A stretch of 64,000 bases of DNA. It comes from Octopus sinensis (lineage: Eukaryota). How positions within the stretch are numbered: the first letter of the stretch is position 1; each line of letters begins with the position of its first letter. The position numbers and the translations under genes are program-made. Location: positions 186,001-250,000 of the forward strand of contig NW_021835987.1 in assembly GCF_006345805.1 (NCBI RefSeq), written 5' to 3'. Shown here in pieces: positions 2,008 through 45,923 of the stretch. The notes under the pieces were generated by a model. The model did no database searches. It saw only the letters and a program-made list of their open reading frames with translations, and was not told the origin of the DNA.

Positions 2008-2042
<35 letters not shown>

Positions 2043-2537: not shown

Positions 2538-2698
2538 CGTTGTTCCATATGACTTTCGATTTTGTATCAGAATAACGAATTGAAGGGTAGTGATCTGAGT
2601 TTACCCACTGACAGCTACCTGGCGCCTCAATGATGACCAACCAGCCTCTGTCCCCTTCACAAACAATATTTATTGTTATATAGAAGCGACGTGTAAGA
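2538..2698 (-). pseudogene. Copy E: orphan exon 4 of the PAN-like secreted gene family (open frame, intact splice sites)
   Basis: ccgtag| ... |gtaagt, 161 nt, phase 2-1; LTRRFYITINIVCEGDRGWLVIIEAPGSCQWVNSDHYPSIRYSDTKSKVIWNN. No partner exons found nearby on this strand. Confidence 0.8.
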
Positions 2699-11288: not shown

Positions 11289-11589
11289 ATGGAAGTGATG
11301 CTGTTAACCCTTACAACAATCCTGGCTGTCACCTCAGGTCTGGGAATTAATGAAGCTAACTACAAACGTTTGGAACCTGGTTATTCCTATGATTATACTG
11401 AGACACCTCTAACACAACCACAATTCCCCACCGCAGGAAGTCGACTGGAATGTGCCGCCATCGCTCTAAACAGCCAATCAGAAGTTTTCACTTACAACAG
11501 CGTCAGCCGTGTTTGTAAGAATTACTCACCGAAAGATATAATAACAGTCGTCAACAAGACTAACATCAACGAGATTGCCTTCTATAGAT
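11289..11589 (+). CDS. Copy A exon 1: signal peptide + 2-Cys PAN/Apple-like module
   Basis: MEVMLLTLTTILAVTSG hydrophobic leader; SRLECA...FTYNSVSRVCKNY; donor AGAT|GTAAGT, phase 1; conserved in copies B, C, D. Confidence 0.85.
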
Positions 11590-11894
11590 GTAAGTGATGC
11601 TTCTTTTTCTGTTTTTTTTTTTTGCCCGAGGTAAGATATAATTAACAGTTTAACACTGAGGTCAATGTCATCGACGTCCTGCTCGAAATTGCTGACCTTG
11701 TGTCACAATTTGAAATCAGACCTAAACTCTGCCAGACGCCAACCTGGAATTTCATGATCTCCGGATTGGCTTAGAGGTACTACAAAGTTTCCAAGGCCAA
11801 CCTGAAGGTAATTATGGTTAAGGGTGCCTCACTATTCCCTCGTCGAAAGTGGACAACCGGGTGCAGTTTAACTTTATACATATTATTATTGTTA

Positions 11895-11962
<68 letters not shown>

Positions 11963-12529
11963 GAGTGAGAGAGCTGTGCATGCCATCAAAGTGACACTGG
12001 GGTACAAATATACGAAGCCCAGTATACCCATCATGACTACCCGTCTGTTAAGGGTACACCAGGCACATGCATCACAACAATATGTGCGAGACATGATGAT
12101 CTCATATCAAGATAAACAGCACATGACCTTGTAGGTGGGGCCCAATTAGAATTTTCTTCTGGTCGAGTAAGCCATCCTGCTCAAAAGGTCCCTGAGTAAG
12201 GGTTGTTTAAGGATGTTGAACGAAACACCAGTGTTTCCAGAGGTGACTTATTCAAACCCCAAAGAATCCCTCTCAAGACATGGCTATGATGCTCCCCCAC
12301 TACTTCTGCTCGTGATCAGATTTGCACATATCGTCAGCCACTAAGGGACATGCTCAACTGGTTAAGGTCAAACAACTGACAAGCAAATCTGTGGTATTGA
12401 GCAGAATATTTGCTGTAGCCCATCTTTTATACCAAGACAAAACAATGTACATGATAACACTTCCAATCAGTGAAGATCAGAAGCCATGAGAACCTCTGCC
12501 TGGTACTGCATCATTTATTATTATTATTA

Positions 12530-12594
<65 letters not shown>

Positions 12595-13114
12595 GAGTGA
12601 GAGAGCTGTGCATGCCATCAAAGTGACACTGGGGTACAAATATACGAAGCCCAGTATACCCATCATGACTACCCGTCTGTTAAGGGTACACCAGGCATAT
12701 GCATCACAACCATATGTGGGCGACATGATGATCTCATATCAAGATAAACAGCACATGACCTTGTAGGAGTAAGACATCCTGCTCAAAAGGTCCCTGAGTA
12801 AGGGTTGTTTAAGGATGTTGAACGAAACACCAGTGTTTCCAGAGGTGACTTATTCAAACCCCAAAGAATCCCTCTCAAGACATGGCTATGATGCTCCCCC
12901 ACTACTTCTGCTTGTGATCAGATTTGCACATATCGTCAGCCACTAAGGGACATGCTCAACTGGTTAAGGTCAAACAACTGACAAGCAAATCTGTGGTATT
13001 GAGCAGAATATTTGCTGTAGCCCATCTTTTATACCAAGACAAAACAATGTACATGATAACACTTCCAATCAGTGAAGATCAGAAGCCATGAGAACCTCTG
13101 CCTGGTACTGCATC

Positions 13115-13166
<52 letters not shown>

Positions 13167-13648
13167 GAGTAAGAGAGCAGTGCATGCTATCAACGTGAAA
13201 CTAGGGTACAATTATACTAACTCATCATACCTATCATGTCCACCCGTCTGATAAACTTTAACCGGGTACTTGCAACCCAATCATATGTGCATGACATGGT
13301 GCTCTCATATCAAGATAAACAGCGCATGGCCTTACAGTTGGCGCCCAGTTATTCTTCAGGTCAAGTAGCCCATCCCGTTCAAAAGGTCCTTGAATAAAGG
13401 TTGTTTAAAGATGTTTAACGAAACACCCATGGCTATGATGCTGCCCCACTATTTCTGCTCATGATCAGAAATACACATACCGTCAGCCACTAAGGGACAT
13501 GATCAACTAGTTAAAGTCAAACAACTGATAAGCAAATCTGTGGTATTGAGCAGAATATTTGCTGTAGCCCATCTTTTATACCAAGACAAAACAATGTACA
13601 GTTAAGATCAGAAGCCACGAGAGCCACTGTCTGGTACTGCATCAGAGC

Positions 13649-13650
<2 letters not shown>
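11963..13650 (-). mobile_element. Three tandem copies (11963-12512, 12595-13114, 13167-13650) of a ~550-bp (TAA)n-associated non-coding element
   Basis: Same unit (gagtgagagagc...ggtactgcatc) bounded by (TTA)n; further copies at 31507, 32600, 43292 and 52040. First two copies share private variants. Confidence 0.85.
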
Positions 13651-13700
<50 letters not shown>

Positions 13701-13769
13701 GTTGTTGTTGCTGTTGTTGTTGTTTTTGTTGTTTTTGTTCTTCTTTTTGTTCTTCTTCTTTTTCTTCCT

Positions 13770-13800
<31 letters not shown>

Positions 13801-13810
13801 TTATTATTAA

Positions 13811-13876
<66 letters not shown>

Positions 13877-13917
13877 CATTATTATTATTATTATCATTAT
13901 TATTACTATTATTTCAG

Positions 13918-14096
13918 ATAGTCAATGGATCAAAGTATATGCCTTATCGATGGGACTTGGTTCGAAAGTCTATGAATCATTTTTGAATGAAGGAATTCCT
14001 TCAACCTGGAATGTGAGCGAATGCATAGGTGCCGTCTGTCCTAACCTTTTCCGACATCCTTTCCTCGATCTCTGGGACCATCTTTCAATTGATGAG
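13918..14096 (+). CDS. Copy A exon 2
   Basis: tttcag|...|gtacgt, 179 nt, phase 1-0; (Y)SQWIKVYALSMGLGSKVYESFLNEGIPSTWNVSECIGAVCPNLFRHPFLDLWDHLSIDE. Confidence 0.9.
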
Positions 14097-14873
14097 GTAC
14101 GTGCATAAATGATTCTTATGCGCATTCATATACACAAACATAAACAAACTTAAGTTGGCATCAAGTCATCCATTTTGTGGGAGGAAACAATCACTGTTCT
14201 TGAGATTACTTATTTTACTGATTTTAAAAATCAAAGTTTACCTTAAACTCAGAACGTAAAGGCACGTGAATAAATATTTATGTACTTCAAAATATTACGT
14301 TCACAAGTCTATTGACACTGCCATTTGAAAACACTCAGAATATATTTGCGCTATCTGTGCGCTCAAACAAACACACACACTGATATGTATGTGTGTGTTT
14401 AATAAATTTCAATACGACAAGATGGAATAAACAACTTTTATTTCTAATCACTACAATTGTTTCAGTGCATCATTACCAGCTGGTAATTACTGAAAGTTAC
14501 ATACATCATACACACTATTGCATTAATATGATTCTAAAGTAGCTGTATACTTGCACGTTTTCAGGTGAGTAGTGTCCGAGCACTGCTGGATAATCCTTAG
14601 TTTTTCTTTTCTTTTACGACTCTACCATATTTTTATTTTTAACATTCCATTGAGAAAGAAGGTCGTGGAAGTGCAAAAATATAGAAATGAGAAAAGTTAC
14701 TAAAAGTATATCGATGTAAATAATAGTTAAAAAATAAATAAATCCTGTCTACATTCCGTATGACACTGACTTCCGTTAAAGTGGAACAGTCAGAGACACA
14801 AAAGAAAAGCTATTGGTAAATTCTACTGATATAGAAAAGCTTTGATTAACAAAACCCTGACGATGCGACTTTG

Positions 14874-15039
14874 CCCGTATAGACGTATAATGCTAAAAAG
14901 CACAAAATATCAGCAAGACAAAATTGTCCACCACTGGCAGTGGACCTGTTAGATTAGGTGTCTTCATTGTGTTTGAGCCTCATTAGCATAAAACCCATGG
15001 TAGTATTCTGAGCTTTTTATCACTATACGTCTATACGAG
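14874..15039. mobile_element. Small MITE-like element
   Basis: Imperfect terminal inverted repeats cccgtatagacgtataatgctaaaaagc / gctttttatcactatacgtctatacgag. Confidence 0.55.
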
Positions 15040-15158
15040 ATACATTCTCAGAACGAATACTGCAAGTTTATTGCGTCCTTAAACTATTACCAGGTTAACT
15101 ATGATACAACGATGGCAATTCAATACCAATATTGCTTCTCTCACTTTGGTTGCATGCA

Positions 15159-15195
<37 letters not shown>

Positions 15196-15221
15196 AATAA
15201 TACACGATTTTTGTTTTTTAG

Positions 15222-15385
15222 GTGAAACTAGTGGTTTATAAAAACCAAACAGCTGTGGTTAATATGGTGTTCGATGGACGAAATACAAGCATTGAAAGCT
15301 GGTTCTCTCGCGAAAAGTTGAAAAGCTCTCCTTGGTCGGACGTATTTTCGGCTTCTGTCAATCTCTTCGCAATGGAAGGATTTCA
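15222..15385 (+). CDS. Copy A exon 3
   Basis: ttttag|...|gtaagt, 164 nt, phase 0-2; VKLVVYKNQTAVVNMVFDGRNTSIESWFSREKLKSSPWSDVFSASVNLFAMEGF. Confidence 0.9.
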
Positions 15386-15567
15386 GTAAGTAATTTTTAT
15401 CTGTATATTTTTTTAGTTATTTGTAATTTACATTCTCTGTCCAAAACCTTTTGAGATTAACACATACTTTTATCCCAATGGCGTTTATAAATAAAGTACC
15501 GGTGAACAAAGTACTAAGGTGGCGAGCTGGCGGAAACGTTAGCACGCCGGGCGAATTGCTTAGCGGT

Positions 15568-15569
<2 letters not shown>

Positions 15570-15629
<60 letters not shown>

Positions 15630-15774
15630 TGATGATGATGATGATGATGATAATAATAATAATAATGATATTAATAATAATGATAATAATGATAATATTA
15701 ATAATTAAAATAATATTAATAATTAAAATAATAATAATAATAATAATAATAAAATAATATTAATAATAATATTA

Positions 15775-15823
<49 letters not shown>

Positions 15824-15900
15824 TAATGATAATAATTATAATAATAATAATAATGATGGTAATAATAATAATAATAATAATGATAATAATAATAATAATG

Positions 15901-15937
<37 letters not shown>

Positions 15938-16032
15938 GAATAATTATAATAATGATGATGATGATAATAATAATAAGAAGAAGAATAATGATGATGATAA
16001 TAATAATAATGATAATAATAATAATAATAATG

Positions 16033-16063
<31 letters not shown>

Positions 16064-16095
16064 TAATAATAATAATGATAATAATAATAATGATG

Positions 16096-16133
<38 letters not shown>

Positions 16134-16206
16134 GATGATGATGGTGATGATGATAATAATAATAATAATAATAATATTAATGATGATGATAATAATAATA
16201 ATAAAA

Positions 16207-16237
<31 letters not shown>

Positions 16238-16269
16238 TAATAATTATTATTATTATTATTATTATGATT

Positions 16270-16300
<31 letters not shown>

Positions 16301-16394
16301 TGATAATAATATTAATAATAATAATAATAATGATGATGATAATGATAATAATAATATTAATGATAATAATAATAATAATAATGATAATAATAAT

Positions 16395-16429
<35 letters not shown>

Positions 16430-16431
16430 TG

Positions 16432-16489
<58 letters not shown>

Positions 16490-16830
16490 TAATAATAATA
16501 ATAATAATAATAATGCAAAGACCTCAAAATACAAAGACCTGGAAATAGAGGTAACTAGAATGTGGAATCTGAAAACAGAAACAATTCCTATCATAGTAGG
16601 TGCATTAGGCATGATAAAAAAATATTCAGACAAATACATAACAAAAACACCAGGACTTACAAACACATATAACATACAGAAAATTGCACTACTAGGCACT
16701 GCACACATCCTACGCAGAACACTTTCCATACAATAACCATCAGAGCATCACAACAAATCACAGCACATACCCAAGGCACACAGAGCTGCGCTCGGTAGTG
16801 AAGTGAAAGCACGCTATAAAAATAAAACTA

Positions 16831-16875
<45 letters not shown>

Positions 16876-16927
16876 GATAATGACAATAATAATAATAATA
16901 ATAATGATAATAACGGTCATAATAACC

Positions 16928-16962
<35 letters not shown>

Positions 16963-16984
16963 CATAATTATAATAATAATATTG

Positions 16985-17042
<58 letters not shown>

Positions 17043-17052
17043 CAACAACAAC
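15570..17052. repeat. ~1.5-kb imperfect (AAT)n/(GAT)n tract, interrupted by an R4/Dong-like fragment
   Basis: Direct reading. Confidence 0.95.
16514..16832 (+). mobile_element. 5'-truncated R4/Dong-like non-LTR retrotransposon 3' end in (TAA)n
   Basis: SKYKDLEIEVTRMWNLKTETIPIIVGALG...IQKIALLGTAHILRRTLSIQ*, typical C-terminus of restriction-like-endonuclease non-LTR elements; (TAA)n on both sides. Confidence 0.75.
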
Positions 17053-17101
17053 ATCGAAGAATACCTGAGGGATGAGAACCCAGGTTCGAAGTTTTCCCCA
17101 A

Positions 17102-17147
17102 GACACCTGATGAAGACTGGAGGGTATATCAGCGGAAACGTTGTGTT
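17102..17147 (+). ncRNA. Minimal type I hammerhead motif with canonical core and mismatched stem II, sense within intron 3 of copy A
   Basis: GACAC CTGATGA A GACTG-GAGGGTATAT-CAGCG GAAA CG TT GTGTT; two mismatches at the base of stem II. Confidence 0.55.
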
Positions 17148-17497
17148 AACAAGAAACAAGATGAGGACAAATATCCGTCGAATGTAAATAATGTAAATAA
17201 TGTAAGTAATGTAAATAAAGGCTACTACACACGTATAAGGACCGTCCTTCTTAGTATTGCCCTACACACAGATTACTTCTACGAAACTTTCACTCACAAA
17301 GATTTCGTGGACTCTAAAGTAGTGAACACTACTTGTCCAGAGTATCGCTGAGCAGATTCAGTTCGAACTTGGAAGCCAGGTTGCTTCATAAATTATGTAA
17401 TTGCGAGGCAAACTTCTAAACCTCAACATCTGATAACGACAATAGCAGCAAAACGAAAACTACAGCGATATCTTATTTTGTTTTTCTCCCTTTACAG

Positions 17498-17658
17498 TGG
17501 AAGACGTCGTTTCTATATGTCATCTCTGCATAATGATTGTGGAGGAGACAGCGGTTGGTTCATGGTTGTTCAAAGTAGTTTCTGTCCATTTGAGGAAATT
17601 CTTCCTCCTCCTGTAATATTTTACTCACCTGAAAATTTGCAAGTTATATGGAATGACA
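17498..17658 (+). CDS. Copy A exon 4
   Basis: tttacag|...|gtaagt, 161 nt, phase 2-1; (H)GRRRFYMSSLHNDCGGDSGWFMVVQSSFCPFEEILPPPVIFYSPENLQVIWND. Confidence 0.9.
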
Positions 17659-17889
17659 GTAAGTATTTCGTCATCTGCTTTAATTGTCTCTCTGCTATGT
17701 TAATATATTAAGTACTATAAGTCTAATTATAATTGCGTGGTGAACACAAGGAAAAACTCAGGACACATTTCGGTGTTATTATACCTCCTCAGCAAAGCAT
17801 AAGTCTCACAGTACTTAACGAAGAGCATCATTGTGTGATATAATATTACACACGTGTAGGTGTGGGGAAATTCAGTATGAGGGGTTGCA

Positions 17890-18895
17890 AAGAAATATTT
17901 CATATCATTTGTGACCTCATCATAATTGACTGTTTTCTATCTACATTATCCTTTCTACTATAGACACAAGGCCTGAAATTTGGGGGAGTGGATTAGTCCA
18001 TTACATCAACTCCAGTACGCAACTGGTACTTATTTTACTGACCCCTGAAAGGCTGAAGCAACGTCGGAGTTTGAACTCAGGACGTAGCGACGGGTAAATA
18101 TCGCTAAGCATTTCGTCCAGCGTGCTAACGATTCCGCCAGTTCGCCGCCCTTTTTTCCTTTCTAAGAGAATTCTTTCTACTATTGGCACAAGGCTCGAAA
18201 TTTTGGGGGCGGGGGCCTGTCGATTACATTGATCCCAGTACGCGATAGGATGAAAAAACCCTGGGTTCAAGTGTATCACGAAAGACCTAGCTGGAGTCAG
18301 AAACTTCTGAGCTCTTTCACAGGGCTTAAATTAAGTACCAGTTACACACTGGGGTCGATGTAATTGACTTAATCCATTTGTCTGTCCTTGTTTGTACTCT
18401 CTGTGTTTAGCCCCTTGTGGGTAGTAAAGAAATAGGTATTTCGTCTGTCTTTACATTCTGAGTTCAAATTCCACTGAAGCCAATTTTACCTTTCATCCTT
18501 TCAGGGTCCACAAACTAAGCACCTGTTGCGTACTGGGATCAATGTAATCGACAGGCCCCCGCCCCAAAAATATCGAGCCTTGTGCCAATAGTAGAAAGAA
18601 TTCTCTTAGAAAGGAAAAAGGGCGGCGAACTGGCGGAATCGTTAGCACGCTGGACGAAATGCTTAGCGATATTTACCCGTCGCTATGTCCTGAGTTCAAA
18701 TTCCGACGAGGTTGACTTTGCCCTTTAGCCTTTCGGGGTCAGTAAAATAAGTACCAGTTGCGTACTGGGATTGGTGTAATGGACTAGTCCACTCCCCTAA
18801 ATTTCAGGCCTTGTGCCTATAGTAGAAAGGATTATGTAGATAGGAAACAGTCAATTGTGATGAGGTCACAAATGATATTAAATATTGCTTTGCTT
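17890..18895. repeat. ~355-bp inverted repeat (SINE-containing arms 17890-18243 and 18527-18895) around a ~280-bp spacer in intron 4 of copy A
   Basis: Arms are reverse complements (aatatt..atcatttgtgacctcatc / gatgaggtcacaaatgat..aatatt). Confidence 0.9.
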
Positions 18896-19146
18896 CGAAA
18901 GCTGAAGAATTTTACGTCCCAAGGTTCAATTATTTGCCAAATAGATGGTATTATGTCATCAATAACGATGGGGAAAATTGATATCAGATTTGGGCAGAAG
19001 GCCAGCAGTTTCGTGGGGAGAAGATTCGTCGATTGCATCGATCTCTGCGATATTTTGAACTCAGAACCTCGAAGAGAGACGATATTCTTATTAATTTTGC
19101 TGTTAATTTCGTTGTTATTGTTGTTGTTACTTTTATTATTTTGCAG

Positions 19147-19196
19147 ATTCGGAAACAGCTGATTCCATGGCCATCTTCATCCGCTTGAATTTGTAA
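19147..19196 (+). CDS. Copy A exon 5 (terminal)
   Basis: ttgcag|, phase 1; (N)SETADSMAIFIRLNL*. Five exons total 855 nt = 284 aa + stop with no frame break. Confidence 0.9.
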
Positions 19197-21315: not shown

Positions 21316-21462
21316 CATGTCTGTCCTTGTTTGTCTCCTCTATGTTTAGCCCCTTGTGGGTAGTAAAGAAACAAATATTTACACAAGTTGCACGAGCGAC
21401 TTCAACAGTGACACCTCCGCGCGCACACATAGATACACATACACACAATTGAAAGGCAATGA

Positions 21463-21525
<63 letters not shown>

Positions 21526-21694
21526 CTGTTCACTGACAAGACTTCGTGCTGCATCGACACAAATGAAATTTCAATGTTGAAGTGAAACTGCTACTTCTTA
21601 AATAGAGAGGCCCCTTAACGGGTAGAACTTAAATACTCGTCTGCCGTTACGTTCTGAGTTCAAATTCCGTTGAGGTCGACTTTGCCTTTCATCC

Positions 21695-23475
21695 TATGAT
21701 ATCATATTTTCTCTCACAATTCCTACGACCATTAATAGAGCTATCTGCGGATGTATGTGACAGTACTGAGGACCTCCTTAGCAGGATCCACGAATGCAAC
21801 AACACGTGTGACCTCAAGAACCACATCGTGTGTAGCATGGATGTGGTATCACTATACCCCTCCATCGATGTAGACTTTGCTGTCGATAAATGTATAGAAA
21901 TAGTTAGTGAGAGTGGTATGATATTTAAGAATGTGGATGTATATGAACTACGGCTCTTCCTGGCCCTGACGTGTACCAATGCATACCTGTCGCGCAATAA
22001 CCTTCTATATGTTTGTCCCACCCGTAACAAACGCGGTAGACCACCTACCATTACCTCAGCATACAGGTAGACGCACTGTGAGCGCTGGCAGGGATGGACA
22101 AAGCTGGACTACCCACCTTTAAGTGCACACGACATTAGAACCACCATCGCACATGCTATCGGTGTCAGCCTGAGAATTACGCTAAAAACACATATTTTTA
22201 AGTTTGACAACAAACTATATAGGCAGACGAAAGGCGGTGCTATTGGAGTGGGGATCGCCGGTGACGTTGCAAACCTCTTCATGGTATGGTGGGGCAAACA
22301 TTTTAAACAGTGCCTAGCAAACCGTAACATCCACTTGGCTATGTACTCTCGTTACGTCGACGACATTAACCTTGTTGTGAAATATAATACAGACACAGTT
22401 ATGGGCCCTCTACCAAGTGAAGAACAGGTGATGACATCTATACAACACATAGCTGACTCTATCCACAGCAGTATAAAATTTACCATAGACTACCCCTCTA
22501 AACACCCCAGTAAACGATTACCCGTCCTAGATACTGAGCTATGGATGGAAGATGCTATGGTTAATGGAACCATTAAACCCTGTATACTCCACTCACACTA
22601 TCAGAAACCGATGGCTAATCCACTAGTAATCCGTAGTGACTCAGCTATGTCGGATACTGCCAAACTCAACATCCTAGTGGCAGACTTAATGAGAGTAATG
22701 AGGAATGTATCACCACTATGCCAACCACAAGAACGACAACAACACATCCAGCACTACATATTCCAAATGCAACGCTCCGGATACACACAAGACGATAGAG
22801 TCAGAGTGTACAAAAGAGCGAAAGCTAGATTCGAACGCATTCTAAGGAACGACGAAAACGATATATTCCCCCTATACCGCAACAAGTTCTGGAATAGGTT
22901 AGAGAGGGACACCAACAAAAGGAAGAGAAACGTTACTTGGTACGATAACAGGAGATTTCACGGAGTAATGTTCGTTGACACCACACCTAAGAACGAGCTA
23001 AGTAAGGCATTCAAGAAAATCCTGCGCACTACTGGCCTAAAAATTAAAGTTGTAGAAAAGACAGGTAGGACTATCAAATCGGCATTATCCATTTGATAGA
23101 ATCACCTGTCAAAGTAATTGTGCAGTATGTTCGACAAATCCACATGTAAACTGCAAAAACAAAGGGCACTGTATACCAGATTAAGTGCCAGGAGGGAGAG
23201 CTTGCGCGACTAACCCAGAGTCATACATAGGTGAGACTTCTAGAAGCATCAATGATAGGTTCAAAGAACACCTGGACAACTACATTGAAAGGAAGCCAAA
23301 CTCCATCTTCTACCAACATGCTGTAGACTGCCACAAAGGATCCTTAGGGAAACTTAAGTTCAACATCCTATCAACACATCCCACCGATGCAATGTTGAGA
23401 CAGGTCACAGAAGCTGTTTGTATACAAGAATACAAACCTACTCTCAACCGAAAATCCGAATGGAGTAACATCTAG
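21695..23475 (+). mobile_element. Penelope-like retroelement, 5'-truncated and decayed (RT + GIY-YIG endonuclease)
   Basis: SMDVVSLYPSID, YRQTKGGAIGVGIAG, YSRYVDDI RT motifs; VYQIKC..YIGETSRSINDRFKEH GIY-YIG; in-frame TAG at 22068-22070 and frameshifts near 23100-23200. Confidence 0.92.
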
Positions 23476-23504
23476 ATCCCATTCAGAAGGACTATTCTAT
23501 AACC

Positions 23505-23535
<31 letters not shown>

Positions 23536-23855
23536 GTTTACTTGTAGTCCTTACATACAGGTTGCAATGCGTATGTGCAGTTATATATAACTGTATGAGC
23601 GTACGTTGTTTGATACGTACAGTTGCACTTAGGCAACTGTACGGTGAGTGAGAGCAATAGATGTTATCTCAGGACATATATAGCAGTAACTGTCCTATCG
23701 ATGCGTTACGCTTGATAAATAGATGGTTATATCAACCTGTGTTAAGATGTATAGCATAATAATCATATTCAATGAAGATATAATGGTGAAAGCCTGGAAA
23801 TGCTTTGGTCGTTTCAAGAAAATATCGTGAATAACTATATAGTGTTAAGAAACAG

Positions 23856-25217: not shown

Positions 25218-25382
25218 CGAAATCCTTTCATTGAGAAATAATGTGGAGCGGTTGAAGATAGGTCATCCCATGGAGAGCTTTTCAAATTTGCATGAGAGAA
25301 CCAGCTTTCAAGGCTTAAATTTCGTCCATCGAAAATCATAGTCACAACAGAGGATTGTTTTTTTATAAATCACCAGTTTCAC
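25218..25382 (-). pseudogene. Copy B exon 3, defective
   Basis: Acceptor reads TG instead of AG; 165 nt vs 164 (A7 run, +1 frameshift); corrected frame VKLVIYKKQSSVVTMIFDGRNLSLESWFSHANLKSSPWDDLSSTAPHYFSMKGF. Confidence 0.85.
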
Positions 25383-30475: not shown

Positions 30476-30684
30476 TAAAATCGCGGTTAAAATTGCAGTT
30501 TTTAAGGGTAAAATATGCCTGAACCATATCTAAACTGATCTAAAATATAAGTTACCTTTATTACTATTACTATGATAAATGATAAAGTGTGTGTAAAGGA
30601 ATCTCATTTCGTGTGTGTGTGTTTGTGTGTGTGTGTGTAGGTGTAGGTGTGTGTGTGTGAGAGAGTGGAAGGGTGTATACATAC

Positions 30685-30863
30685 CTCATCAATGGCAAGA
30701 TGGTTCCAGAAATCCAGGATAGGATGTCGGAAGAAGTTCGGACAAAAGACACCGTGACGTTTGACCACATTCCAGGTTGAAGGACTTCTTAGATTCAAAA
30801 ATGGATTATAAACTTTCGAACCAGCTCCCATTGATAAGGCATATGTTTTAATCCATTGGCTAT
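30685..30863 (-). pseudogene. Copy B exon 2
   Basis: ttttag|...|gtatgt, 179 nt, open; first conserved Cys replaced by Arg (VKRHG vs DKCLG/DKCID/SECIG). Confidence 0.85.
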
Positions 30864-30919
30864 CTAAAATAACAACAACAACAATAATAATAATAATAGT
30901 AGTATAATAATAATAATAG

Positions 30920-33712: not shown

Positions 33713-34040
33713 ATCTATAAAAGGAAATCTCGTTGGTGTCATTCGTGCTGACGACTGTCATTATATTCTTCGGTGAGTAATTCTTGCAAACACGACTGAC
33801 ATTGTTGTAAGGGAAGAATTCTGATTGGCTGCTTAGAGCGAGGCCGGCACATTCCAGCAGACTTCGTGTTGAATAGAATATTTCCGATGATGATGACTGA
33901 AGGTAATCATAAGAGTAGCCAGGAGGCAAACGTTCGTAGCTTGCTTCACGTTCCTGATCTGAGCTAACAACCAGAATGGTTGCAAGAGTTAACAGAAGCA
34001 CTGTTATCACAGCAGGATGGGTAACAGGAAACCGGGACAT
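33713..34040 (-). pseudogene. Copy B exon 1 (open frame; gene lacks a usable exon 3 and nearby exons 4-5)
   Basis: MSRFPVTHPAVITVLLLTLATILVVSS...LLECAG...RVCKNY...FYR; AGAT|GTAAGT; 328 nt. Confidence 0.85.
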
Positions 34041-40391: not shown

Positions 40392-40441
40392 TTAAGGTTT
40401 TAGGCGGATGAAGATGGCCATGGAATCAGCTGTTTCAAAAC
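40392..40441 (-). pseudogene. Copy C exon 5 (terminal, intact)
   Basis: ttgcag|; (G)FETADSMAIFIRLKP*. Confidence 0.88.
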
Positions 40442-40878
40442 CTGCAAAATAATAAAAAAACGACAATAACAACAACAACAATAACAGCAAGATTAACAAG
40501 ACGAATATCAGTAATAACAAATGCAACTTTGGGAATTTCTCTCAGAACTACGCTCCATTGTTCGGATCAATTGGAATGCTCCTCGTCGTAACCGACGGAG
40601 TATCATCAGAAGCTTTAGACATATATTCACTTTTGTACGTGGTTTTAAGGTAAGATGCGTGCTTTCCGACCGCATAAATCCGGGTTCAGTTCCACTGCGT
40701 GGTACGCTGGGTAAGTGTCTTTTACTATAGCCCCGGGCTGATAAACGCCCCGTGTCGGGAATTAGGAGGCGGAAGCAGAAAGAAGCTCTCGTATATATAT
40801 ATATATATATATATATGCATACATACATACATATACATATATGTGTGTGTGTGTGTGTACATATATATATATGTACAC

Positions 40879-40954
<76 letters not shown>

Positions 40955-41045
40955 TATATATATATATATCATATAATGACCGCGTGTGTACCGTTGGCGA
41001 TGTTTTTCCTCTGTCTTCCCTTCTCTGGATCTTTCCTTGTCCTAT

Positions 41046-41080
41046 GTTTCCGACGAAGAGCTCCGCTCGAAACGTTAAAC
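41046..41080 (+). ncRNA. Minimal hammerhead-like motif, CCGACGA (U4C) core, in a ~190-bp element in (TA)n
   Basis: GTTT CCGACGA A GAGC-TCC-GCTC GAAA CG TT AAAC. Confidence 0.55.
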
Positions 41081-41587
41081 CCTTCTTCTTCCCTTCCTTC
41101 CTGAGCGTCCAATAATACTATATTTGTTCCACGTTCTCGCGTTTTTGTGTTTTCATGTTTGGATTAACTTTATATATATATATATATGTACATATATGTG
41201 TGTTGAAAAGATCCTGTCTTGGGATACAAGAAAATACTGGACGATCCCTTAATTATGATTTTATTCAACACATTCCCCCTCAGGTTTACACAATTATTAC
41301 AGTAGTCCTGTAAAAGACTCGGAAGTTTGAATTTCCAGCCAGGCCTTTTGCCAAGAACTCCTCCGTACTAAAAACTCCACACCTACACATGCGTAATATT
41401 GTATCAAATGATGGTTCTCTCTGTTAAGTATTGTGGGACCTATGCTTCACTGAGGAGGTATAATAACACCGAAATATGCCCTGAGTTGTTTCCTGTGTTC
41501 GCCACGCCATCATCATAATAAGGCTTTTAGTACTTACTGCATTAACTTGGCTGTGAGACAAGTTAAAACGGATGACTATAAACATAC

Positions 41588-41748
41588 CGTCATTCCATAC
41601 GATTTTCGAATCTTCACCTGAGTAGATTATTGCAGGAAAATGAGGAAACCGCTCCCACGGACAGTAACTCCCTTCAGCAACAATCAACCAACCACGATCT
41701 ATATCACAACCTCCGTGATTAGATGAAATATAGAAATGACGTATCCAA
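41588..41748 (-). pseudogene. Copy C exon 4 (intact)
   Basis: tttacag|...|gtatgt, 161 nt; (H)WIRHFYISSNHGGCDIDRGWLIVAEGSYCPWERFPHFPAIIYSGEDSKIVWND. Confidence 0.88.
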
Positions 41749-43105
41749 CTGTAAAATGGAGAGAAAAAGACACTGTTATAGTTTTGTGTTTGCGGTCATT
41801 CTCGTTATCAGATGTTGTTATTAAATAGGTTACCTGGCAACTACGTAATTAAGAGGTTCCCAAGTTCGAACCGACATTGTTCGGTGATACATTGAACTAT
41901 CTTCTACTTTACAGTCAATGAAATGTTTGTGAGTGAAGGCCTCGTAGATGTAATCTGTGTGTCGGGCAATTCTAAGAAGGACGGTCCCTATATATATATA
42001 TATGTAGTAGACTTTATTTGTTAGCCAATTTAACACTAACGCCTCACACTTGGGCAAGGGGATGTTAATGGAGATAAATCTGATGCAAATTTCTGGGCCA
42101 GGTTTTATGCGTGGGAATAACTTTTCTCTTCCTCTTTCCCAGCATTTGCAATGGGCCAGGACAAAATCCAGTGTTTTGTCCTTATTCTTCCAACTAAGGA
42201 ATATTTCAAAGTGGTCATCCCTAGTCGAGAAGGATGAATAGTTAAAGGCATTCCCAACATTACTGTCCCCTCTTCGGACTGCATTTCCAATATGAGCTAT
42301 ATTTAAAAACGGTAGGGTGTCATTTCTAGCGATATTTAGTGCTTCTTAGTTTAATGATGAAACTATTATATAGACAGAGGTTCGTAACCACTTTTATAAT
42401 TGCAGATCCGCAAAGAATTACCCAAAATATCCCTATGCACTAATCAGGGGACTGTCAAATTCATCATCATCACCAGTCAATATATGGGTGCATATGTCAT
42501 TCGGTGTTGTTATTAACTAATTTTCGTTTAATCACTGTATAGGTGAGCAGAAACAGAGGAGGAAAGAAAATCATGCAAATTTTGTCATATATGTTCATAA
42601 GTAAATGGATCTCGGTCTGTTTCGAAGATTACTCTGAATATTGATTTACTTGATCAAGTGAAATTCCTGCTCAACGAATTTGTAGCGTGCAATTGCAACC
42701 ACAAACATAGAATCACAAGCTAGACATCATGACCACTACGTCAAGTGCCTCCTTCATTGCTAGACACAAGTGTGAGTGTGTGTGCTTTGTAGTTGGTTGT
42801 TTATTCTCAACCGAAATTCGATGAATTCGATGACATACCATAATAGAATGCAACGAAGTTAATCCTCAGTCGTTGCAGGTGAACATTAATTAATAATATT
42901 AATTCCGCCATTAAACTGGTAATATTTATTGCAACGATAGAAATATAGGCGAAGTGTATATAGTTGATTATATAGACACTGTACTTCACTGGTACATTAT
43001 TCATAGATACGAACAGAGTACAAATTAATGTTAATCACAAAAGGTTTTAGCACAGTATTAAATTACAAATAACTAAAATAAATTAGAGTGATAAAAATTA
43101 CATAC

Positions 43106-43266
43106 TGGTTTCCCATTGAGAAATCAATCACAGGGCTTTGAGGTAAGTCGGACCAAGGAGAGCTTTTCAGGTTTTGAAGAGAGAACCAGCTTTCAAGGGT
43201 TGCATCTCGCCCATCAAACACCACACTAACCACAGCTGTTTGTTCTTTATAAACCACAAGTTTCAC
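43106..43266 (-). pseudogene. Copy C exon 3 (intact, one codon shorter)
   Basis: ttttag|...|gtatgt, 161 nt, phase 0-2; VKLVVYKEQTAVVSVVFDGRDATLESWFSLQNLKSSPWSDLPQSPVIDFSMGN. Confidence 0.88.
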
Positions 43267-43291
43267 CTAAAAAAAATCGTGAAATATTATT

Positions 43292-43830
43292 GAGAGAGCA
43301 GTGCATGCTACCAAAGTGACACTGGGATACGAAGCTCAATATATCAACCAAGACTATTCGTCTGGTACGTGTACACCAGGCACAGGCATCAGAACAATTT
43401 TGGGCATGGCATGGTGATCTCATATCAAGATGAACAGCACATGATCTTGCAGATGGGTCCCAGTTTGAATTTTCTTGAAGTCGAGCTGCACATCCCTCTC
43501 AAAAGTTACCCTGAATAAGTTTTTTTAAAAATGAAGAACGTAACACCCACGCTTTTAGAAGTAAATTATCCAAGTCTCAAAGAATTCCCGTCAACACATG
43601 GCTGTGTTGCTCCCCGACAACTTATGCTCGGGATGAAATATGCGCATATCTTTAGACATTACGGGATATACTCAACTGGTCAACTGGTAATGTTAGACAA
43701 ATGAAAAGGGCAAAATATTTGTTGTAGACCATCTTTTAACATGACAAAACATGGACATGTTAAGACTTCCAATCACTTAAATCAAAAGCCATGAGAACGA
43801 CTGCCTGATAGTGCATCAGGGCATCGGTTC
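43292..43830. mobile_element. Older, diverged copy of the ~550-bp (TAA)n-associated element next to the exon 3 acceptor
   Basis: gagagagcagtgcatgctaccaaagtgacactgg...gtgcatcagggcat; a short remnant sits at the same position in copy A (~15150-15200). Confidence 0.75.
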
Positions 43831-43840
43831 CGAATCAGGA

Positions 43841-43886
<46 letters not shown>

Positions 43887-44021
43887 GTTGTTGTTGTTGT
43901 TGTTGTTATTGTTGTTGTTGTTGTTGTAGTTGTTGTCATTCACTTCTGAAACATATGTTTTCGAATCGCTTCAGGCTGGTGTAACATAAAGCATTTATTT
44001 ACATATGTTTGGTGCTTTCAA

Positions 44022-45139
44022 TACCTAGTTGGTGGAAATCACCTTATTTCGACTGGAAAAATTGATCCAACCAAGCTCTCAATTCTGCATCAGTATTGAA
44101 CGAAACTCCGCGTATAGGATGTGAAAGAGATCGAAAGAGGTGGAAACTCGTTGGTTTCAAATCAGGAGAGTACTGCGGTGTGGCAACACATCCCAACCAT
44201 GCGCTTGAATGGCTTCCTTGCTCATATTGCCGTTGTCATGCAGCAGAAGAACTCTGTGATGCCGATTAGGTCTTTTGTCTTCGATAGCTGATTTGAATCG
44301 TTCCATCTGTTGAACATAGAGCTCCGTGTTGACCGTTATGCTTCCGTTCAAGCAATTCGTAATGGATAATCCCTTCCCAGTCCCAACATACGCACAACAT
44401 CGTTTTACGCAAATGAAGATCTTCTTTCACTCGCGGTGTCTCTTGTTTACCGGGGCTACGCCATTCTTTACGCAGCTTCATATTGATGTACAGGCACCAT
44501 TTTTCGTCCCCACCAACGATTCGGTAAAGAAATCGTTACTTGTGTCCATGAGTTGAGCGGTGACAAGCAAGCAAACCAGCGGAGATTGAGGCTCGTTGAT
44601 TTTTGTCGTTGTCACTTAAAGCATGCGGAACTCATACTCCATACTTCTGAACCTTTCCCATCGAGTGAAGATGGGAGCATTCCATTTTCTCTGCCAGATC
44701 CCTTGTCGTTTGACGAGAATTTTCGTGCAAAAGTTGGTGTAATTGCTCTTCCTCGAACTCAACTGGACGGCTAGGATGAGGTACGTCTTTGAGGCCAAAA
44801 TTTCCATTTTTAAACTTGGCATACCGATCACGAGCGGTTCTTTCAGCTATAGCACCCTCTCCATACACTACACAAATATGGCGAGCAGCTTTTTCGGCCT
44901 CAGAACCTTGATTAAAAACAAAATGGAGGATGTGTCGAAAATTGCTCATCTTTCTTGACTTGACATTCCATTTTAATGACCAAGAAATAAACAAATATTA
45001 ACTAAAATTAACAATATAAAAAAAAACATTCCCAAGTGATTCAAAAATAGAATTCTCGACAAAAATAGATTCCAATATTTAAAGACGCAAAAATTCCAAA
45101 ATTATAAAAAAAAGGCGGCAAATTATTTACCAGCTTAAT
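44022..45139 (-). mobile_element. Decayed mariner element in intron 2 of copy C
   Basis: Frameshifted transposase: GEGAIAERTA, KTMLCVCWDWEG, VLLLHDN, GWDVLPH; boundaries approximate. Confidence 0.85.
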
Positions 45140-45591
45140 ATATATCTATTTAAAAATCATATTAATGCAATAATGTGTATGATGTATGTATTATCCAGCA
45201 TTAAATAGTAATGATTAGTAATAAAAGCTGTTCATTTCAGCGTCTTGTATTAAAATTTATTTAAACACACACACGTATATCTGTGTGTTTGTGCGTGTGT
45301 GTGTGTGTGTGTTTGTTTGTGTGTGAACACAAACAGCGCAAATATATTAAGAACGTTTTTAGATCGCGATGCCAATAAACTTGTGAACATAATAGTTTAT
45401 AGCAATTCAGTACTTCTTAATGTGCCCTGACGTTCTGAGTTTTAATACAGTCAAGGTATACTTTGTCTTTTAAAAATCAATAAAATAAGTAATCTAATAG
45501 ATTCTCACCTCTCACAAAATGGATGACTTTATGCCAACTTAATTCTATGTTTGTGTAAATGAATGTGCATAAAAATCGTTCCTGCACGTAC

Positions 45592-45770
45592 CTCCTCGAT
45601 GGGTAGATCACTCCAGAAATCAAGGATAGGATGTCGGAAGAAGTTAGGACAAACGGTATCGATGCATTTGTCCACATTCCAGGTTGAAGGACTTCCTATA
45701 TTCATGAATGATTCATAGACTTTCGAACCAGCTCCCATTGATATGGCATATGTTTTAATCCATTGGCTGT
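45592..45770 (-). pseudogene. Copy C exon 2 (intact)
   Basis: tttcag|...|gtacgt, 179 nt; SQWIKTYAISMGAGSKVYESFMNIGSPSTWNVDKCIDTVCPNFFRHPILDFWSDLPIEE. Confidence 0.88.
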
Positions 45771-45804
45771 CTGAAATAATAATAATAAAAATAAAAATAA
45801 TAAA

Positions 45805-45923
45805 AAGAAGAAGAAGAAGAAGAAGAAGAAGAAGAAGAAGAAGAAGAAGAAGAAGAAGAAGAAGAAGAAGAAGAAGAAGAAGAAGAAGAAGAAGAAGAAG
45901 AAGAAGAAGAAGAAGAAGAAGAA
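45805..45923. repeat. (AAG)n microsatellite forming most of the 165-nt intron 1 of copy C
   Basis: Direct reading. Confidence 0.95.

What the first reader, a model, noticed from the sequence alone, without database searches (positions are those of the whole stretch)
2538..2698. Hypervariable core in exon 4: whole-codon replacement between near-identical flanks
Seen: comparing E (2538-2698) with D (55857-56020), the last 58 coding nt differ at one base and the RRFYIT stretch is identical. Between them 17 of 26 codons change amino acid (INIVCEGDRGWLVIIEAPGSCQWVNS vs NHADCLTERGWLCINGGSAYCQYDNM), while both Cys and RGWL stay. A and C carry two further versions. The end of exon 3 behaves similarly (TAPHYFSMKGF vs ANPEYFRMEGI after 26 identical nt). 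Inference: diversifying selection on ligand-binding loops, as in molluscan immune lectins and fibrinogen-related proteins, or patchwork gene conversion.
Basis: partly seen in the sequence, partly recalled or inferred. Interest (0 to 1): 0.7.

Follow-up and report, generated by a model that had tools for sequence, protein, structure and literature searches.

The report
Variable loop exon in octopus gene cluster
Two copies of one exon in an Octopus sinensis cluster of secreted-protein genes share near-identical ends but a scrambled middle that encodes two disulfide-linked loops. This middle varies across the whole family through sequence swapping between copies and probably selection for change, although both copies compared here sit in broken genes.

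Summary
E exon 4 (2538-2698, minus) and D exon 4 (55860-56020, plus) are 161 nt each. They differ at 38 of 78 core bases (17 of 26 codons) but at 1 of the last 58.

The window is Octopus sinensis contig VCDQ01006028.1:186001-250000. It carries five or six copies of an octopus-expanded family: signal peptide, PAN/Apple domain, then an unnamed ~185-aa domain.

D is a pseudogene. "E" joins an orphan exon 4 to exon 3 of a different, broken copy 22.5 kb away.

The D-E core is saturated: 2.06 nt per changed codon, NG86 pS 0.73, pN 0.43, dN/dS about 0.24.

Fifteen D/E-type exon 4 copies from O. sinensis and O. vulgaris show clear mosaicism (p = 0.0002-0.007). Site models give moderate evidence of positive selection at codons next to the two conserved cysteines (p = 1e-5 to 0.08, inflated by recombination).

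A confident AlphaFold model places the core in two loops around a GWL strand. So "patchwork conversion" is supported and "diversifying selection" is plausible but unproven. Function is unknown.

The parts
2538..2698 (-). E exon 4 (the finding). It is an orphan exon with an open frame, an AG acceptor and a GTAAGT donor. Sub-parts: 5' RRFYIT block 2674-2698, variable core 2596-2673, conserved 3' block 2538-2595.
   Evidence: No exon 5 was found in the 2.5 kb downstream. No exons 1-3 lie on this strand between 2699 and 11000. The O. vulgaris orthologue (L002 1655-1815) differs at 4 bases, all amino-acid-changing and all in the core.
55860..56020 (+). D exon 4. Variable core 55885-55962, conserved 3' block 55963-56020.
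   Evidence: It is 161/161 identical to the O. vulgaris orthologue (L003 25220-25380).
51062..51388 (+). D exon 1, with an in-frame TAG at 51215-51217.
   Evidence: Gene C has the same TAG at 46108-46110. E5' has TCG at that position.
53059..53241 (+). D exon 2.
55182..55240 (+). D exon 3 remnant. Only the last 59 nt remain; the acceptor and the 5' two-thirds are missing. The variable tail is 55208-55240 (ANPEYFRMEGI).
   Evidence: O. vulgaris D keeps a complete exon 3 (L003).
56293..56348 (+). D exon 5 (GYALADSMAIFISLRQQN, then stop).
25220..25382 (-). The acceptor AG is changed to TG, and a 1-nt insertion shifts the frame. The variable tail is 25220-25252 (TAPHYFSMKGF).
30682..30867 (-). E5' exon 2. 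The family-invariant first cysteine is replaced by arginine (NVVKRHGVFC).
33714..34040 (-). E5' exon 1 (open frame).
21318..23648 (.). Breakpoint stretch that stands where O. vulgaris has about 7 kb holding E5's own exon 4 (copy F) and exon 5. Homology of E5' to D stops at 23649.
11289..19196 (+). Gene A, apparently intact with five coding exons: about 11289-11590, 13917-14099, 15222-15383, 17498-17658, about 19150-19196.
   Evidence: The O. vulgaris orthologue is P0001.
40398..46263 (-). Gene C: exon 1 at 45937-46263 with TAG at 46108-46110, exon 2 at 45589-45771, exon 3 at 43114-43266, exon 4 at 41588-41748, exon 5 at 40398-40451. NCBI models it as a 199-aa protein that starts at an internal Met (P0029).
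61829..63553 (-). Gene B, 3' part only: exon 4 at 63393-63553 and exon 5 at about 61829-61897. The upstream exons lie beyond the window end. B is the inverted duplicate of A.

Best explanation
**Locus (shown).** The window is part of a tandem and inverted cluster in Octopus sinensis. The family is expanded in octopus and encodes small secreted proteins of about 295 aa from five coding exons. Each has a signal peptide, a PAN/Apple-type domain and a C-terminal domain of about 185 aa that has no Pfam model.

**Structure (modelled).** Exon 4 encodes a strand (RRFYIT), a loop holding the first cysteine, a strand (GWLxI), a long loop holding the second cysteine, then another strand (xIxYS). The scaffold residues are fixed and the loop residues vary throughout the family. 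The tail of exon 3 just upstream varies too.

**How the D-E pattern arose (partly shown, partly inferred).**
1. The cluster grew by repeated segmental duplication.
2. Short-tract gene conversion between paralogues gives different stretches of one exon different ancestries. The D/F-type core is an old lineage. Its 3' 58 nt are shared almost base for base with the E/G/H/K-type copies, and the flanking introns are about 20% diverged.
3. On top of this, a handful of loop codons next to the two cysteines take amino-acid-changing substitutions faster than silent ones. This fits diversifying selection on a recognition surface, or selection against homogenising it.

**State of the copies in this genome (shown).** D, C and E5' are pseudogenes and E is an orphan exon. 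What is seen here is the footprint of that process in decaying copies, not two working genes.

**Inferred only.** The two cysteines form a disulfide, the loops bind a ligand, and the family acts in recognition.
For: **Identity of the locus and family**
- L004 matches the window at 100%, which places it in O. sinensis.
- O. vulgaris is collinear (about 97% BLAST identity; 0.8-2.0% base substitutions).
- The first protein search returned 34 family proteins, all from Octopus.
- Among 78 relatives, 17 hit Pfam PAN_1; none has a Pfam hit on the C-terminal domain.
- A profile search finds 1079 representative proteins with the domain. Those looked up are from oyster, Aplysia, Argonauta, amphioxus, a crinoid and a Myxococcota bacterium.

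**Variability across the family**
- Column entropy is 1.4-2.1 bits over residues 211-280, against 0.25-1.1 elsewhere.
- C, GW, C, P, YS and W stay invariant.

**Structure**
- AlphaFold2 model of P0029: mean pLDDT 88, and 90-98 across exon 4.
- Predicted elements: strand 133-140, loop with Cys144, strand 148-154, loop with Cys159, strand 169-172.

**Mosaic ancestry**
- D-E core 38/78 against introns 62/313 (p = 9e-7); 3' end 1/68 (p = 4e-5).
- Silent differences at conserved-residue codons, D against G/H/K copies: 5-7 over about 6 silent sites in the core, but 0-1 over about 10 in the 3' block.
- The core's silent rate is 2.3 times that of the rest of the exon (p = 0.007).
- K1a has an E-like intron 3 (10/248 differences) but an H2-like core (16 consecutive informative sites, p = 0.0002). 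H2 alternates between G1-like and G2-like stretches (p = 0.0068).

**Selection**
- E against G1/G2/H2: pN 0.24-0.29, pS 0.07-0.13.
- E orthologues: 4 amino-acid-changing and 0 silent differences in the core, against 2/399 in local flanks (p = 0.008). Poisson p = 0.039 at the regional rate of 2.0%.
- Codon 21 runs ACC, GCC, GTC across the G/H/K copies, E of O. vulgaris and E of O. sinensis.
- M1a versus M2a: p = 1e-5 (12 sequences), 2.6e-4 (7 close sequences), 0.0068 (core alone with its own tree). No signal in the 3' 19 codons.
- Top codons are 12, 14, 27 and 28, which flank the two cysteines.

**Pseudogene status:**
Against: - **Mean rate.** Mean omega of the core does not clearly exceed 1. 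It is 0.89 for 13 sequences. For the close clade it is 2.3-2.9, with p from 0.006 to 0.12 depending on the model.
- **Weaker with partitioning.** The site-model signal shrinks when the core is split to allow for recombination: 5' half p = 0.21, 3' half p = 0.044.
- **Recombination** is demonstrably present and is known to inflate such tests.
- **My own code.** The likelihood code uses an NJ topology, branch lengths proportional to the M0 fit, F3x4 frequencies and only 26-53 codons.
- **Not all close pairs show it.** G1/H2 and G2/H2 have no excess of core over intron differences.
- **Conserved D.** D exon 4 is unchanged between the two species.
- **Alternative cause.** Multi-base changes per codon between recent duplicates could be imported patches rather than selected point changes (D/F 1.67 nt per changed codon; the exon 3 tail of D/E5' 12 nt in 6 codons).
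- **Missing data.** There is no expression, ligand or polymorphism evidence.
Confidence: 0.58

Rival explanations
1. Neutral mosaic only. The loop segment is weakly constrained. Its diversity comes from old divergence, pseudogene drift and short gene-conversion patches, and the flanks are held by purifying selection and homogenisation. No positive selection is involved.
For: - NG86 for the D-E core gives dN/dS about 0.24 with saturated silent sites.
- Mean core omega is 0.89 and is not different from 1 (p = 0.65).
- The core's silent rate is raised 2.3-fold.
- Mosaic breakpoints are clear.
- D, C and E5' are pseudogenes and E is an orphan exon.
- E and H2 differ by about 23% in the core and about 21% in intron 3.
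Against: - A mean omega near 1 in a segment that contains at least six invariant scaffold residues implies omega above 1 at other positions.
- M2a beats M1a even for the core alone with its own tree (p = 0.0068).
- Within the core, amino-acid-changing differences exceed silent ones per site in most E against G/H/K pairs.
- The E orthologues show 4 changing and 0 silent differences, confined to the core.
- Intact expressed-type members such as P0012, P0011 and P0014 keep the scaffold while varying the same positions.
Confidence: 0.3
2. D and E are two recently duplicated, working paralogues with near-identical sequence, and strong diversifying selection replaced whole codons by point substitution in a ligand-binding loop.
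For: - The 3' 58 nt are nearly identical and the scaffold residues are kept.
- Site models point to positive selection in the core.
Against: - The introns next to the exon are about 20% diverged, so the flanks are not near-identical.
- Changed codons differ at 2.06 bases on average, and silent positions in the core are saturated.
- D carries a TAG in exon 1 and lacks most of exon 3.
- E has no exons 1-3 or 5 of its own in the window.
- D-type and E-type cores are separate lineages, each with closer relatives: F for D, and G/H/K for E.
Confidence: 0.05
3. Assembly artefact. The inverted duplicate blocks and odd junctions on an unplaced 342-kb contig are collapsed or misjoined haplotypes, so the 'paralogues' are alleles.
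For: - The window lies on an unplaced contig.
- A 99.6% local palindrome sits next to the E5' breakpoint.
- O. sinensis lacks stretches that O. vulgaris has at two junctions.
Against: - The independent chromosome-level O. vulgaris assembly has the same order and orientation of E, A, F, D and B.
- It also has the same D and E exon 4 sequences.
- D and E differ far too much to be alleles.
Confidence: 0.03

Closest known systems
Diversified multigene families of secreted recognition proteins in molluscs and other invertebrates (for example fibrinogen-related proteins of snails and bivalves, expanded C1q and C-type lectin families). This comparison rests on my own background knowledge.
   Same: - A lineage-specific tandem expansion of small secreted proteins.
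- A fixed cysteine scaffold with variable loops.
- A mix of intact genes and pseudogenes.
- Evidence of exchange between copies and an excess of amino-acid-changing differences in the variable stretch.
   Different: - The variable domain has no Pfam model and no significant match to any solved structure.
- No immune or binding function has been shown.
- Somatic diversification, as reported for snail FREPs, was not tested and there is no sign of it.
Fibrinogen-related domain (FReD: fibrinogen beta/gamma C-terminal domains, ficolins, angiopoietin-like proteins, FGL1, MFAP4)
   Same: - In two independent models the top Foldseek hits are almost all FReDs.
- From memory, FReDs also have a Cys-x-GW-x-Cys loop near the binding pocket and end in a hydrophobic '...IRP'-like strand. 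Here the equivalent features are C-x4-GW-x9-C and '...MAIFIRLKP'.
   Different: - The matches are weak: best E-value 0.009-0.02, probability at most 0.77, TM at most 0.43, rmsd 8-10 A.
- None of the 78 relatives hits Pfam Fibrinogen_C.
- A profile search of PDB sequences finds nothing.
- The domain is shorter, about 185 aa.
- One bacterial protein carries this domain and a separate canonical Fibrinogen_C domain.
ApeC (apextrin C-terminal) domain proteins of aquatic invertebrates
   Same: - A similar spread across organisms: molluscs, amphioxus, echinoderms and some bacteria.
- Secreted short forms, and promiscuous combination with EGF, Sushi, TSP1 and other extracellular domains (PMC9585378, PMC8361754).
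   Different: ApeC is defined by eight conserved cysteines and three DXED motifs (PMC9585378). This domain has four conserved cysteines and no such motifs.
PAN/Apple-domain proteins
   Same: - Relatives hit Pfam PAN_1, PAN_3 and PAN_4 in their N-terminal part.
- Public sources name the O. bimaculoides and oyster members 'Apple domain-containing protein'.
   Different: - The octopus member tested (P0012) gives no Pfam hit at E up to 0.01.
- The N-terminal part is modelled with low confidence.
- The variable segment is not in this domain.

Membership tests
PAN/Apple domain | Significant match to a PAN profile in the N-terminal region | tested here: inconclusive
   - 17 of 78 aligned relatives hit PAN_1 (best E = 1.5e-7), 7 hit PAN_4 and 3 hit PAN_3.
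- P0012 has no hit at E up to 0.01.
- Source names say 'Apple domain-containing'.
Fibrinogen-related domain (FReD) | Match to Pfam Fibrinogen_C or to FReD sequences | tested here: not met
   - No Fibrinogen_C hit on this domain (0 hits among 78 aligned relatives).
- A profile search against PDB sequences finds nothing at E up to 10.
Fibrinogen-related domain (FReD) | Same fold as solved FReDs (TM above 0.5, significant Foldseek E-value) | tested here: inconclusive
   - FReDs dominate the hit lists of both models.
- The scores are weak: best E 0.009-0.02, probability at most 0.77, TM at most 0.43.
- The second model is confident (pLDDT 88).
ApeC domain | Eight conserved cysteines and three DXED motifs (PMC9585378) | tested here: not met
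   The C-terminal domain has four conserved cysteines (C145, C150, C237, C253 in P0012) and no DXED motifs.
Segment under diversifying selection | Site-class model with omega above 1 fits better than a nearly neutral model | tested here: met
   - M1a versus M2a: p = 1e-5 (12 sequences), 2.6e-4 (7 sequences), 0.0068 (core only, own tree), 0.078 (7 sequences, core only).
- Caveats: own implementation, very short alignment, recombination present.
Segment under diversifying selection | Mean dN/dS of the segment above 1, or dN above the neutral (intron) divergence | tested here: inconclusive
   - D-E: 0.24 by NG86, saturated.
- E against G1/G2/H2: 2.3-5.
- ML omega of the core: 0.89 (all sequences) to 2.3-2.9 (close clade), p = 0.006-0.12.
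- Core against flanks is raised in E/E-orthologue, E/K1a and G1/G2. It is not raised in G1/H2 or G2/H2.
Gene-conversion or recombinant mosaic among paralogues | Neighbouring stretches with significantly different closest relatives | tested here: met
   - Three-sequence excursion tests: p = 0.0068 (H2 against G1/G2) and 0.0002 (E/K1a/H2, in both directions).
- The core's silent rate is 2.3 times that of the flanks (p = 0.007).
   - D has a TAG in exon 1 and a truncated exon 3.
- E has only exon 4 in the window.
- E5' has a lost acceptor, a frameshift, a Cys-to-Arg change and no exons 4-5.
Ligand-binding loops | Variable residues are surface-exposed, clustered in space and contact a ligand | not testable with these tools
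   - Only secondary structure and confidence values of the model are returned.
- They place the variable residues in two loops beside the cysteines. Exposure, spatial clustering and ligand contact could not be measured.

The most novel reading that the evidence does not exclude
The cluster may work as a cassette system. Exon 4 units, including orphan ones such as E, and the exon 3 tails would be reassorted between paralogues by gene conversion, and perhaps by long-range or alternative splicing across neighbouring copies. Public gene models that join exons 1-3 of one copy to exons 4-5 of another over 45 kb to more than 100 kb hint at this. Such a system would give octopus a combinatorial repertoire of a previously unnamed recognition domain with a disulfide-braced hypervariable surface.
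Probability: 0.07. Interest if true: 0.8.

Novelty: new member of a known kind. Interest (0 to 1): 0.42.

Why it matters
**If the selection signal holds**
- This would be a cephalopod example of a tandemly expanded secreted family that diversifies one disulfide-braced loop surface. That pattern elsewhere marks immune, reproductive or chemosensory recognition proteins.
- It would give a first functional handle on a widespread invertebrate extracellular domain that still has no Pfam model or name.

**What the re-analysis shows in practice**
- A striking contrast between two copies can come from mosaic ancestry in decaying gene copies.
- Pairwise dN/dS on a saturated 26-codon tract is not informative.
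- The gene models and the wider set of paralogues have to be worked out before selection is invoked.

Tried and rejected
- **Pfam.** A scan of a provisional C protein and of P0012 gave no family for the C-terminal domain.
- **PDB sequences.** A profile search found nothing.
- **ApeC.** I considered it because of its spread across organisms and its domain partners. I rejected it on cysteine count and motifs.
- **First structure model.** The full-length model had a disordered N-terminal half (pLDDT 62). I replaced it with a domain model built on a deeper alignment.
- **E exon 5.** Motif search and blastn over window 1-2538 did not find it.
- **P0012 locus.** DNA could not be fetched because the gene range exceeds 100 kb. 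I reached the locus through its neighbour P0020.
- **Orthology of G1/G2 (O. vulgaris) with H1/H2 (O. sinensis).** It could not be resolved because of nested tandem duplicates, so I did not treat them as orthologues.
- **Concerted evolution of A and B.**
  - Overall it is rejected: 140 orthology-pattern sites against 4 species-pattern sites.
  - The 140 is unreliable. 106 of those sites fall in one 600-column stretch next to an internal inverted repeat, which may be misaligned.
  - A small local excess of species-pattern sites (3 against 1) sits around exon 4.
- **A donor for the D-type core.** None was found among the sequences in hand. The best protein-level resemblance (P0014, 12 of 26 residues) is no closer than to other copies. 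This was judged by eye.
- **Literature.** Two text searches found no description of this octopus family.

Full report
**1. What and where**

The window is 100% identical to Octopus sinensis assembly GCA_006345805.1, contig VCDQ01006028.1, positions 186001-250000. The chromosome-level O. vulgaris assembly (OX597841.1) is collinear with it at about 97% BLAST identity. Counting base substitutions only, the two differ by 0.8-2.0%.

A protein search with a provisional model of gene A returned 34 proteins, all from Octopus. They are about 295 aa long and are named 'uncharacterized' or 'Apple domain-containing'.

tblastn and motif searches give this exon map:

| Copy | Strand | Position | State |
|---|---|---|---|
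| A | + | 11289-19196 | apparently intact |
| E5' | - | 34040 down to 23649 | truncated and broken |
| C | - | 46263-40398 | nonsense codon in exon 1 |
| D | + | 51062-56348 | nonsense codon, exon 3 truncated |
| B | - | 63553-61829 | 3' part only, rest off the window |
| E | - | 2538-2698 | isolated exon 4 (the finding) |

**2. Check of the observation**

- Both exons are 161 nt.
- In the core, 17 of 26 codons and 38 of 78 bases differ.
- The last 58 bases differ once.
- Both cysteines and RGWL are kept.

The pattern is not chance. The flanking introns differ at 62 of 313 aligned bases. Against that, the core is enriched (p = 9e-7) and the 3' block with its donor site is depleted (1/68, p = 4e-5).

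The exon 3 statement is also true. After 26 identical bases, 12 of 33 differ, against 18 of 350 in the adjoining intron.

**3.

*D is a pseudogene in this genome.*
- It has a TAG at codon 52 of exon 1. Gene C has the same TAG, and E5' has TCG there.
- It lacks the acceptor and the first two-thirds of exon 3. O. vulgaris D still has that stretch.

- E5' is a 91-97% inverted duplicate of the 5' part of D.
- Its exon 3 acceptor reads TG instead of AG, and it has a 1-nt frameshift.
- In exon 2 an arginine replaces the family-invariant first cysteine.
- Its homology to D stops at 23649.

*E5' once had its own exon 4.*
- In O. vulgaris this copy still has a D-like exon 4, here called F, directly downstream. 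F is itself broken by a 41-nt deletion.
- In O. sinensis that stretch is missing and 21318-23648 stands in its place.

*E exon 4 is an orphan.*
- It lies 22.5 kb away, on the far side of gene A.
- It has no exons 1-3 of its own and no exon 5 within the 2.5 kb left in the window.
- Its upstream intron is about 19% diverged from D, whereas E5' is 3-9% diverged from D. The two pieces therefore have different histories.

**4. The D-E core by itself**

Nei-Gojobori counts for the core give pS 0.73, pN 0.43 and dN/dS about 0.24. The 3' 19 codons give pS 0 and pN 0.02. Changed codons differ at 2.06 bases on average.

Pathway averaging can inflate pS when many codons are replaced, so I also counted silent differences only at codons whose amino acid is conserved.
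- D against E gives 3 differences over 4.5 silent sites in the core and 0 over 10.7 in the 3' block.
- D against the G, H and K copies gives 5-7 over about 6 in the core and 0-1 over about 10 in the 3' block.

The D-type core is therefore an older lineage than its own 3' end and introns.

**5. The wider subfamily**

I collected 15 D/E-type exon 4 copies from O. sinensis and O. vulgaris. The codon analyses used the 13 distinct ones. In all of them the 3' 57 nt are almost invariant even at silent positions, while the core varies.

*Mosaic ancestry is clear.*
- K1a shares intron 3 with E (10 differences in 248 nt). Its core follows H2 at 16 consecutive informative sites (p = 0.0002).
- H2 switches between G1-like and G2-like stretches inside the exon (p = 0.0068).
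- In a partitioned codon model the core has 2.3 times the silent rate of the rest of the exon (p = 0.007).

*There are signs of selection.*
- E against G1, G2 and H2 gives pN 0.24-0.29 and pS 0.07-0.13.
- The E orthologues of the two species differ at four bases. All four change the amino acid and all four are in the core. The local flanks differ at 2 of 399 bases (p = 0.008), and at the regional rate of 2.0% the Poisson p is 0.039.
- Codon 21 reads ACC in the G/H/K copies, GCC in E of O. vulgaris and GTC in E of O. sinensis, a stepwise series.
- My own Goldman-Yang type likelihood code prefers M2a over M1a.

| Data set | M1a vs M2a p-value | Selected class |
|---|---|---|
| 12 sequences, whole exon | 1e-5 | 28% of codons, omega 3.7 |
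| 7 close sequences, whole exon | 2.6e-4 | 17% of codons, omega 6.8 |
| 13 sequences, core only, own tree | 0.0068 | 24% of codons, omega 3.0 |
| 7 close sequences, core only | 0.078 | not significant |
| 13 sequences, 5' half of core | 0.21 | not significant |
| 13 sequences, 3' half of core | 0.044 | 34% of codons, omega 2.8 |
| 12 sequences, 3' 19 codons | 1.0 | none |

The best-supported codons are 12, 14, 27 and 28, directly beside the two cysteines. Codons 21, 31, 33, 34 and the first two codons of the exon follow.

*Caveats.*
- The mean omega of the core is 0.9-2.9 and is not robustly above 1.
- Recombination inflates such tests.
- The alignments are tiny.
- The code uses an NJ tree and proportional branch lengths.
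- Two close pairs (G1/H2 and G2/H2) show no excess of core over intron differences.
- D exon 4 is identical in the two species. With 1.2% regional divergence this is unremarkable (P = 0.14).

**6. What the segment encodes**

Across 15 near-full-length family members, column entropy is highest from the tail of exon 3 through exon 4. There it is 1.4-2.1 bits, against 0.25-1.1 elsewhere. C, GW, C, P, YS and W remain invariant.

A profile of the family finds 1079 representative proteins at E up to 0.001.
- Those looked up include PAN-plus-domain proteins of oyster, Aplysia and Argonauta.
- They also include large multidomain proteins of amphioxus and a crinoid, and one Myxococcota protein.
- Partner domains include ZP, EGF, Sushi, TSP1, F5/8C and VWD.

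Pfam has no model for the domain. PAN_1 is detected in 17 of 78 relatives.

An AlphaFold2 model of P0029, the annotated product of gene C, was built on a 78-sequence alignment and is confident (mean pLDDT 88, pTM 0.85). In it exon 4 forms:
- strand 133-140;
- a loop holding Cys144;
- strand 148-154 (RGWLIVA);
- a 14-residue loop holding Cys159;
- strand 169-172.

The selected codons fall in the two loops and at one position of the GWL strand. That the two cysteines form a disulfide, and that the loops make a single exposed patch, is inference.

**7. Comparison with known families**

- *FReD.* Foldseek against the PDB gives no significant match. The weak top hits of two independent models are almost all fibrinogen-related domains (probability at most 0.77, TM at most 0.43). 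From memory, the C-x4-GW-x9-C loop and the C-terminal MAIFIRLKP strand resemble the FReD P-domain. However, none of the aligned relatives hits Pfam Fibrinogen_C, and a profile search of PDB sequences is empty. FReD is a lead, not an assignment.
- *ApeC.* It has a similar spread across organisms and similar partner domains. It is excluded because it needs eight conserved cysteines and DXED motifs (PMC9585378), and this domain has four cysteines and none of the motifs.
- *General pattern.* Functionally the locus behaves like other expanded invertebrate recognition families. No function has been shown for it.

**8. Verdict**

- 'Diversifying selection' is plausible at a few cysteine-flanking codons but unproven.
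- The specific D-E contrast is an old core between younger or conserved flanks, seen in a pseudogene and an orphan exon.

Two text searches found no earlier description of this octopus family. I file it as a new member of a known kind of system, of moderate interest.

Noticed in passing
window 11289-34311 versus 50792-64000: A large inverted segmental duplication. Block [A, then E5'] mirrors block [D, then B]: A/B are 96-97.5% identical and E5'/D are 91-97%. The arrangement is conserved in O. vulgaris. The copies differ by deletions at 21318-23648 and at about 55002-55182.
   Followed up: partly
window 23897-24382 and 24519-25004: A 99.6% identical inverted repeat (local palindrome), plus a 97.7% direct repeat at 24390-24652 / 24871-25133. 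Both lie right next to the E5' breakpoint. This could be a real rearrangement or an assembly problem.
   Followed up: no
window 46108-46110 and 51215-51217: Genes C and D carry the same TAG nonsense codon within an identical 36-nt context in exon 1, where E5' has TCG. The defect was either inherited through duplication or spread by conversion. NCBI models C as a 199-aa protein from an internal Met, without a signal peptide.
   Followed up: partly
window 44047-44997 (-), 59533-59991 (-), 21165-21314 (+): Remnants of a mariner/Tc1-like transposase reading frame. One lies inside intron 2 of gene C. The others lie in the spacers after D/B and after A.
   Followed up: no
window 1715-2443, 10057-10357, 18326-18552, 52820-52918, 62594-63056: SINE-like units of about 110 nt, often in tandem, 80-92% alike. 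Three copies sit directly downstream of E exon 4, where an exon 5 would be expected.
   Followed up: no
window 3394-3527 / 3910-4043, with copies at 7488-7623, 30920-31066 and 40649-40817: A short element with inverted ends (MITE-like), repeated in several introns and spacers of the cluster.
   Followed up: no
L002 26776-26937 (O. vulgaris OX597841.1): O. vulgaris keeps a D-like exon 4 (copy F) behind the E5' orthologue. A 41-nt deletion in its conserved 3' block breaks the frame. Its core differs from D at 10 bases in 6 codons.
   Followed up: partly
family profile: The C-terminal domain of about 185 aa has no Pfam model but occurs in 1079 representative proteins. Organisms seen include oyster, Aplysia, Argonauta, amphioxus, a crinoid and a Myxococcota bacterium. 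It is often repeated and is combined with ZP, EGF, Sushi, TSP1, F5/8C and VWD domains.
   Followed up: partly
(P0012 locus, no DNA fetched; L007 for P0026); P0027 in L001: Public gene models in the family look unreliable. P0012 spans more than 100 kb across other family genes. P0026 (450 aa) fuses pieces over 45 kb. P0027 skips exon 3. These may be annotation artefacts or hints of splicing between neighbouring copies.
   Followed up: no
window 17051-17650 versus 64000-63400 (around exon 4 of A and B): In a four-way comparison of A and B in both species, orthology-pattern sites dominate (140 against 4). That count is unreliable: 106 of the 140 fall in one 600-column stretch next to an internal inverted repeat and may reflect misalignment. 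Around exon 4 the species-pattern sites lead 3 to 1 (for example Phe in both O. sinensis copies and Tyr in both O. vulgaris copies), which hints at a local conversion.
   Followed up: partly
L003, minus strand (O. vulgaris D exon 3), versus window 55208-55240: The variable tail of D exon 3 differs by one amino acid between the species (ANPEYFRMEGI against ANPEHFRMEGI), while exon 4 is identical.
   Followed up: no
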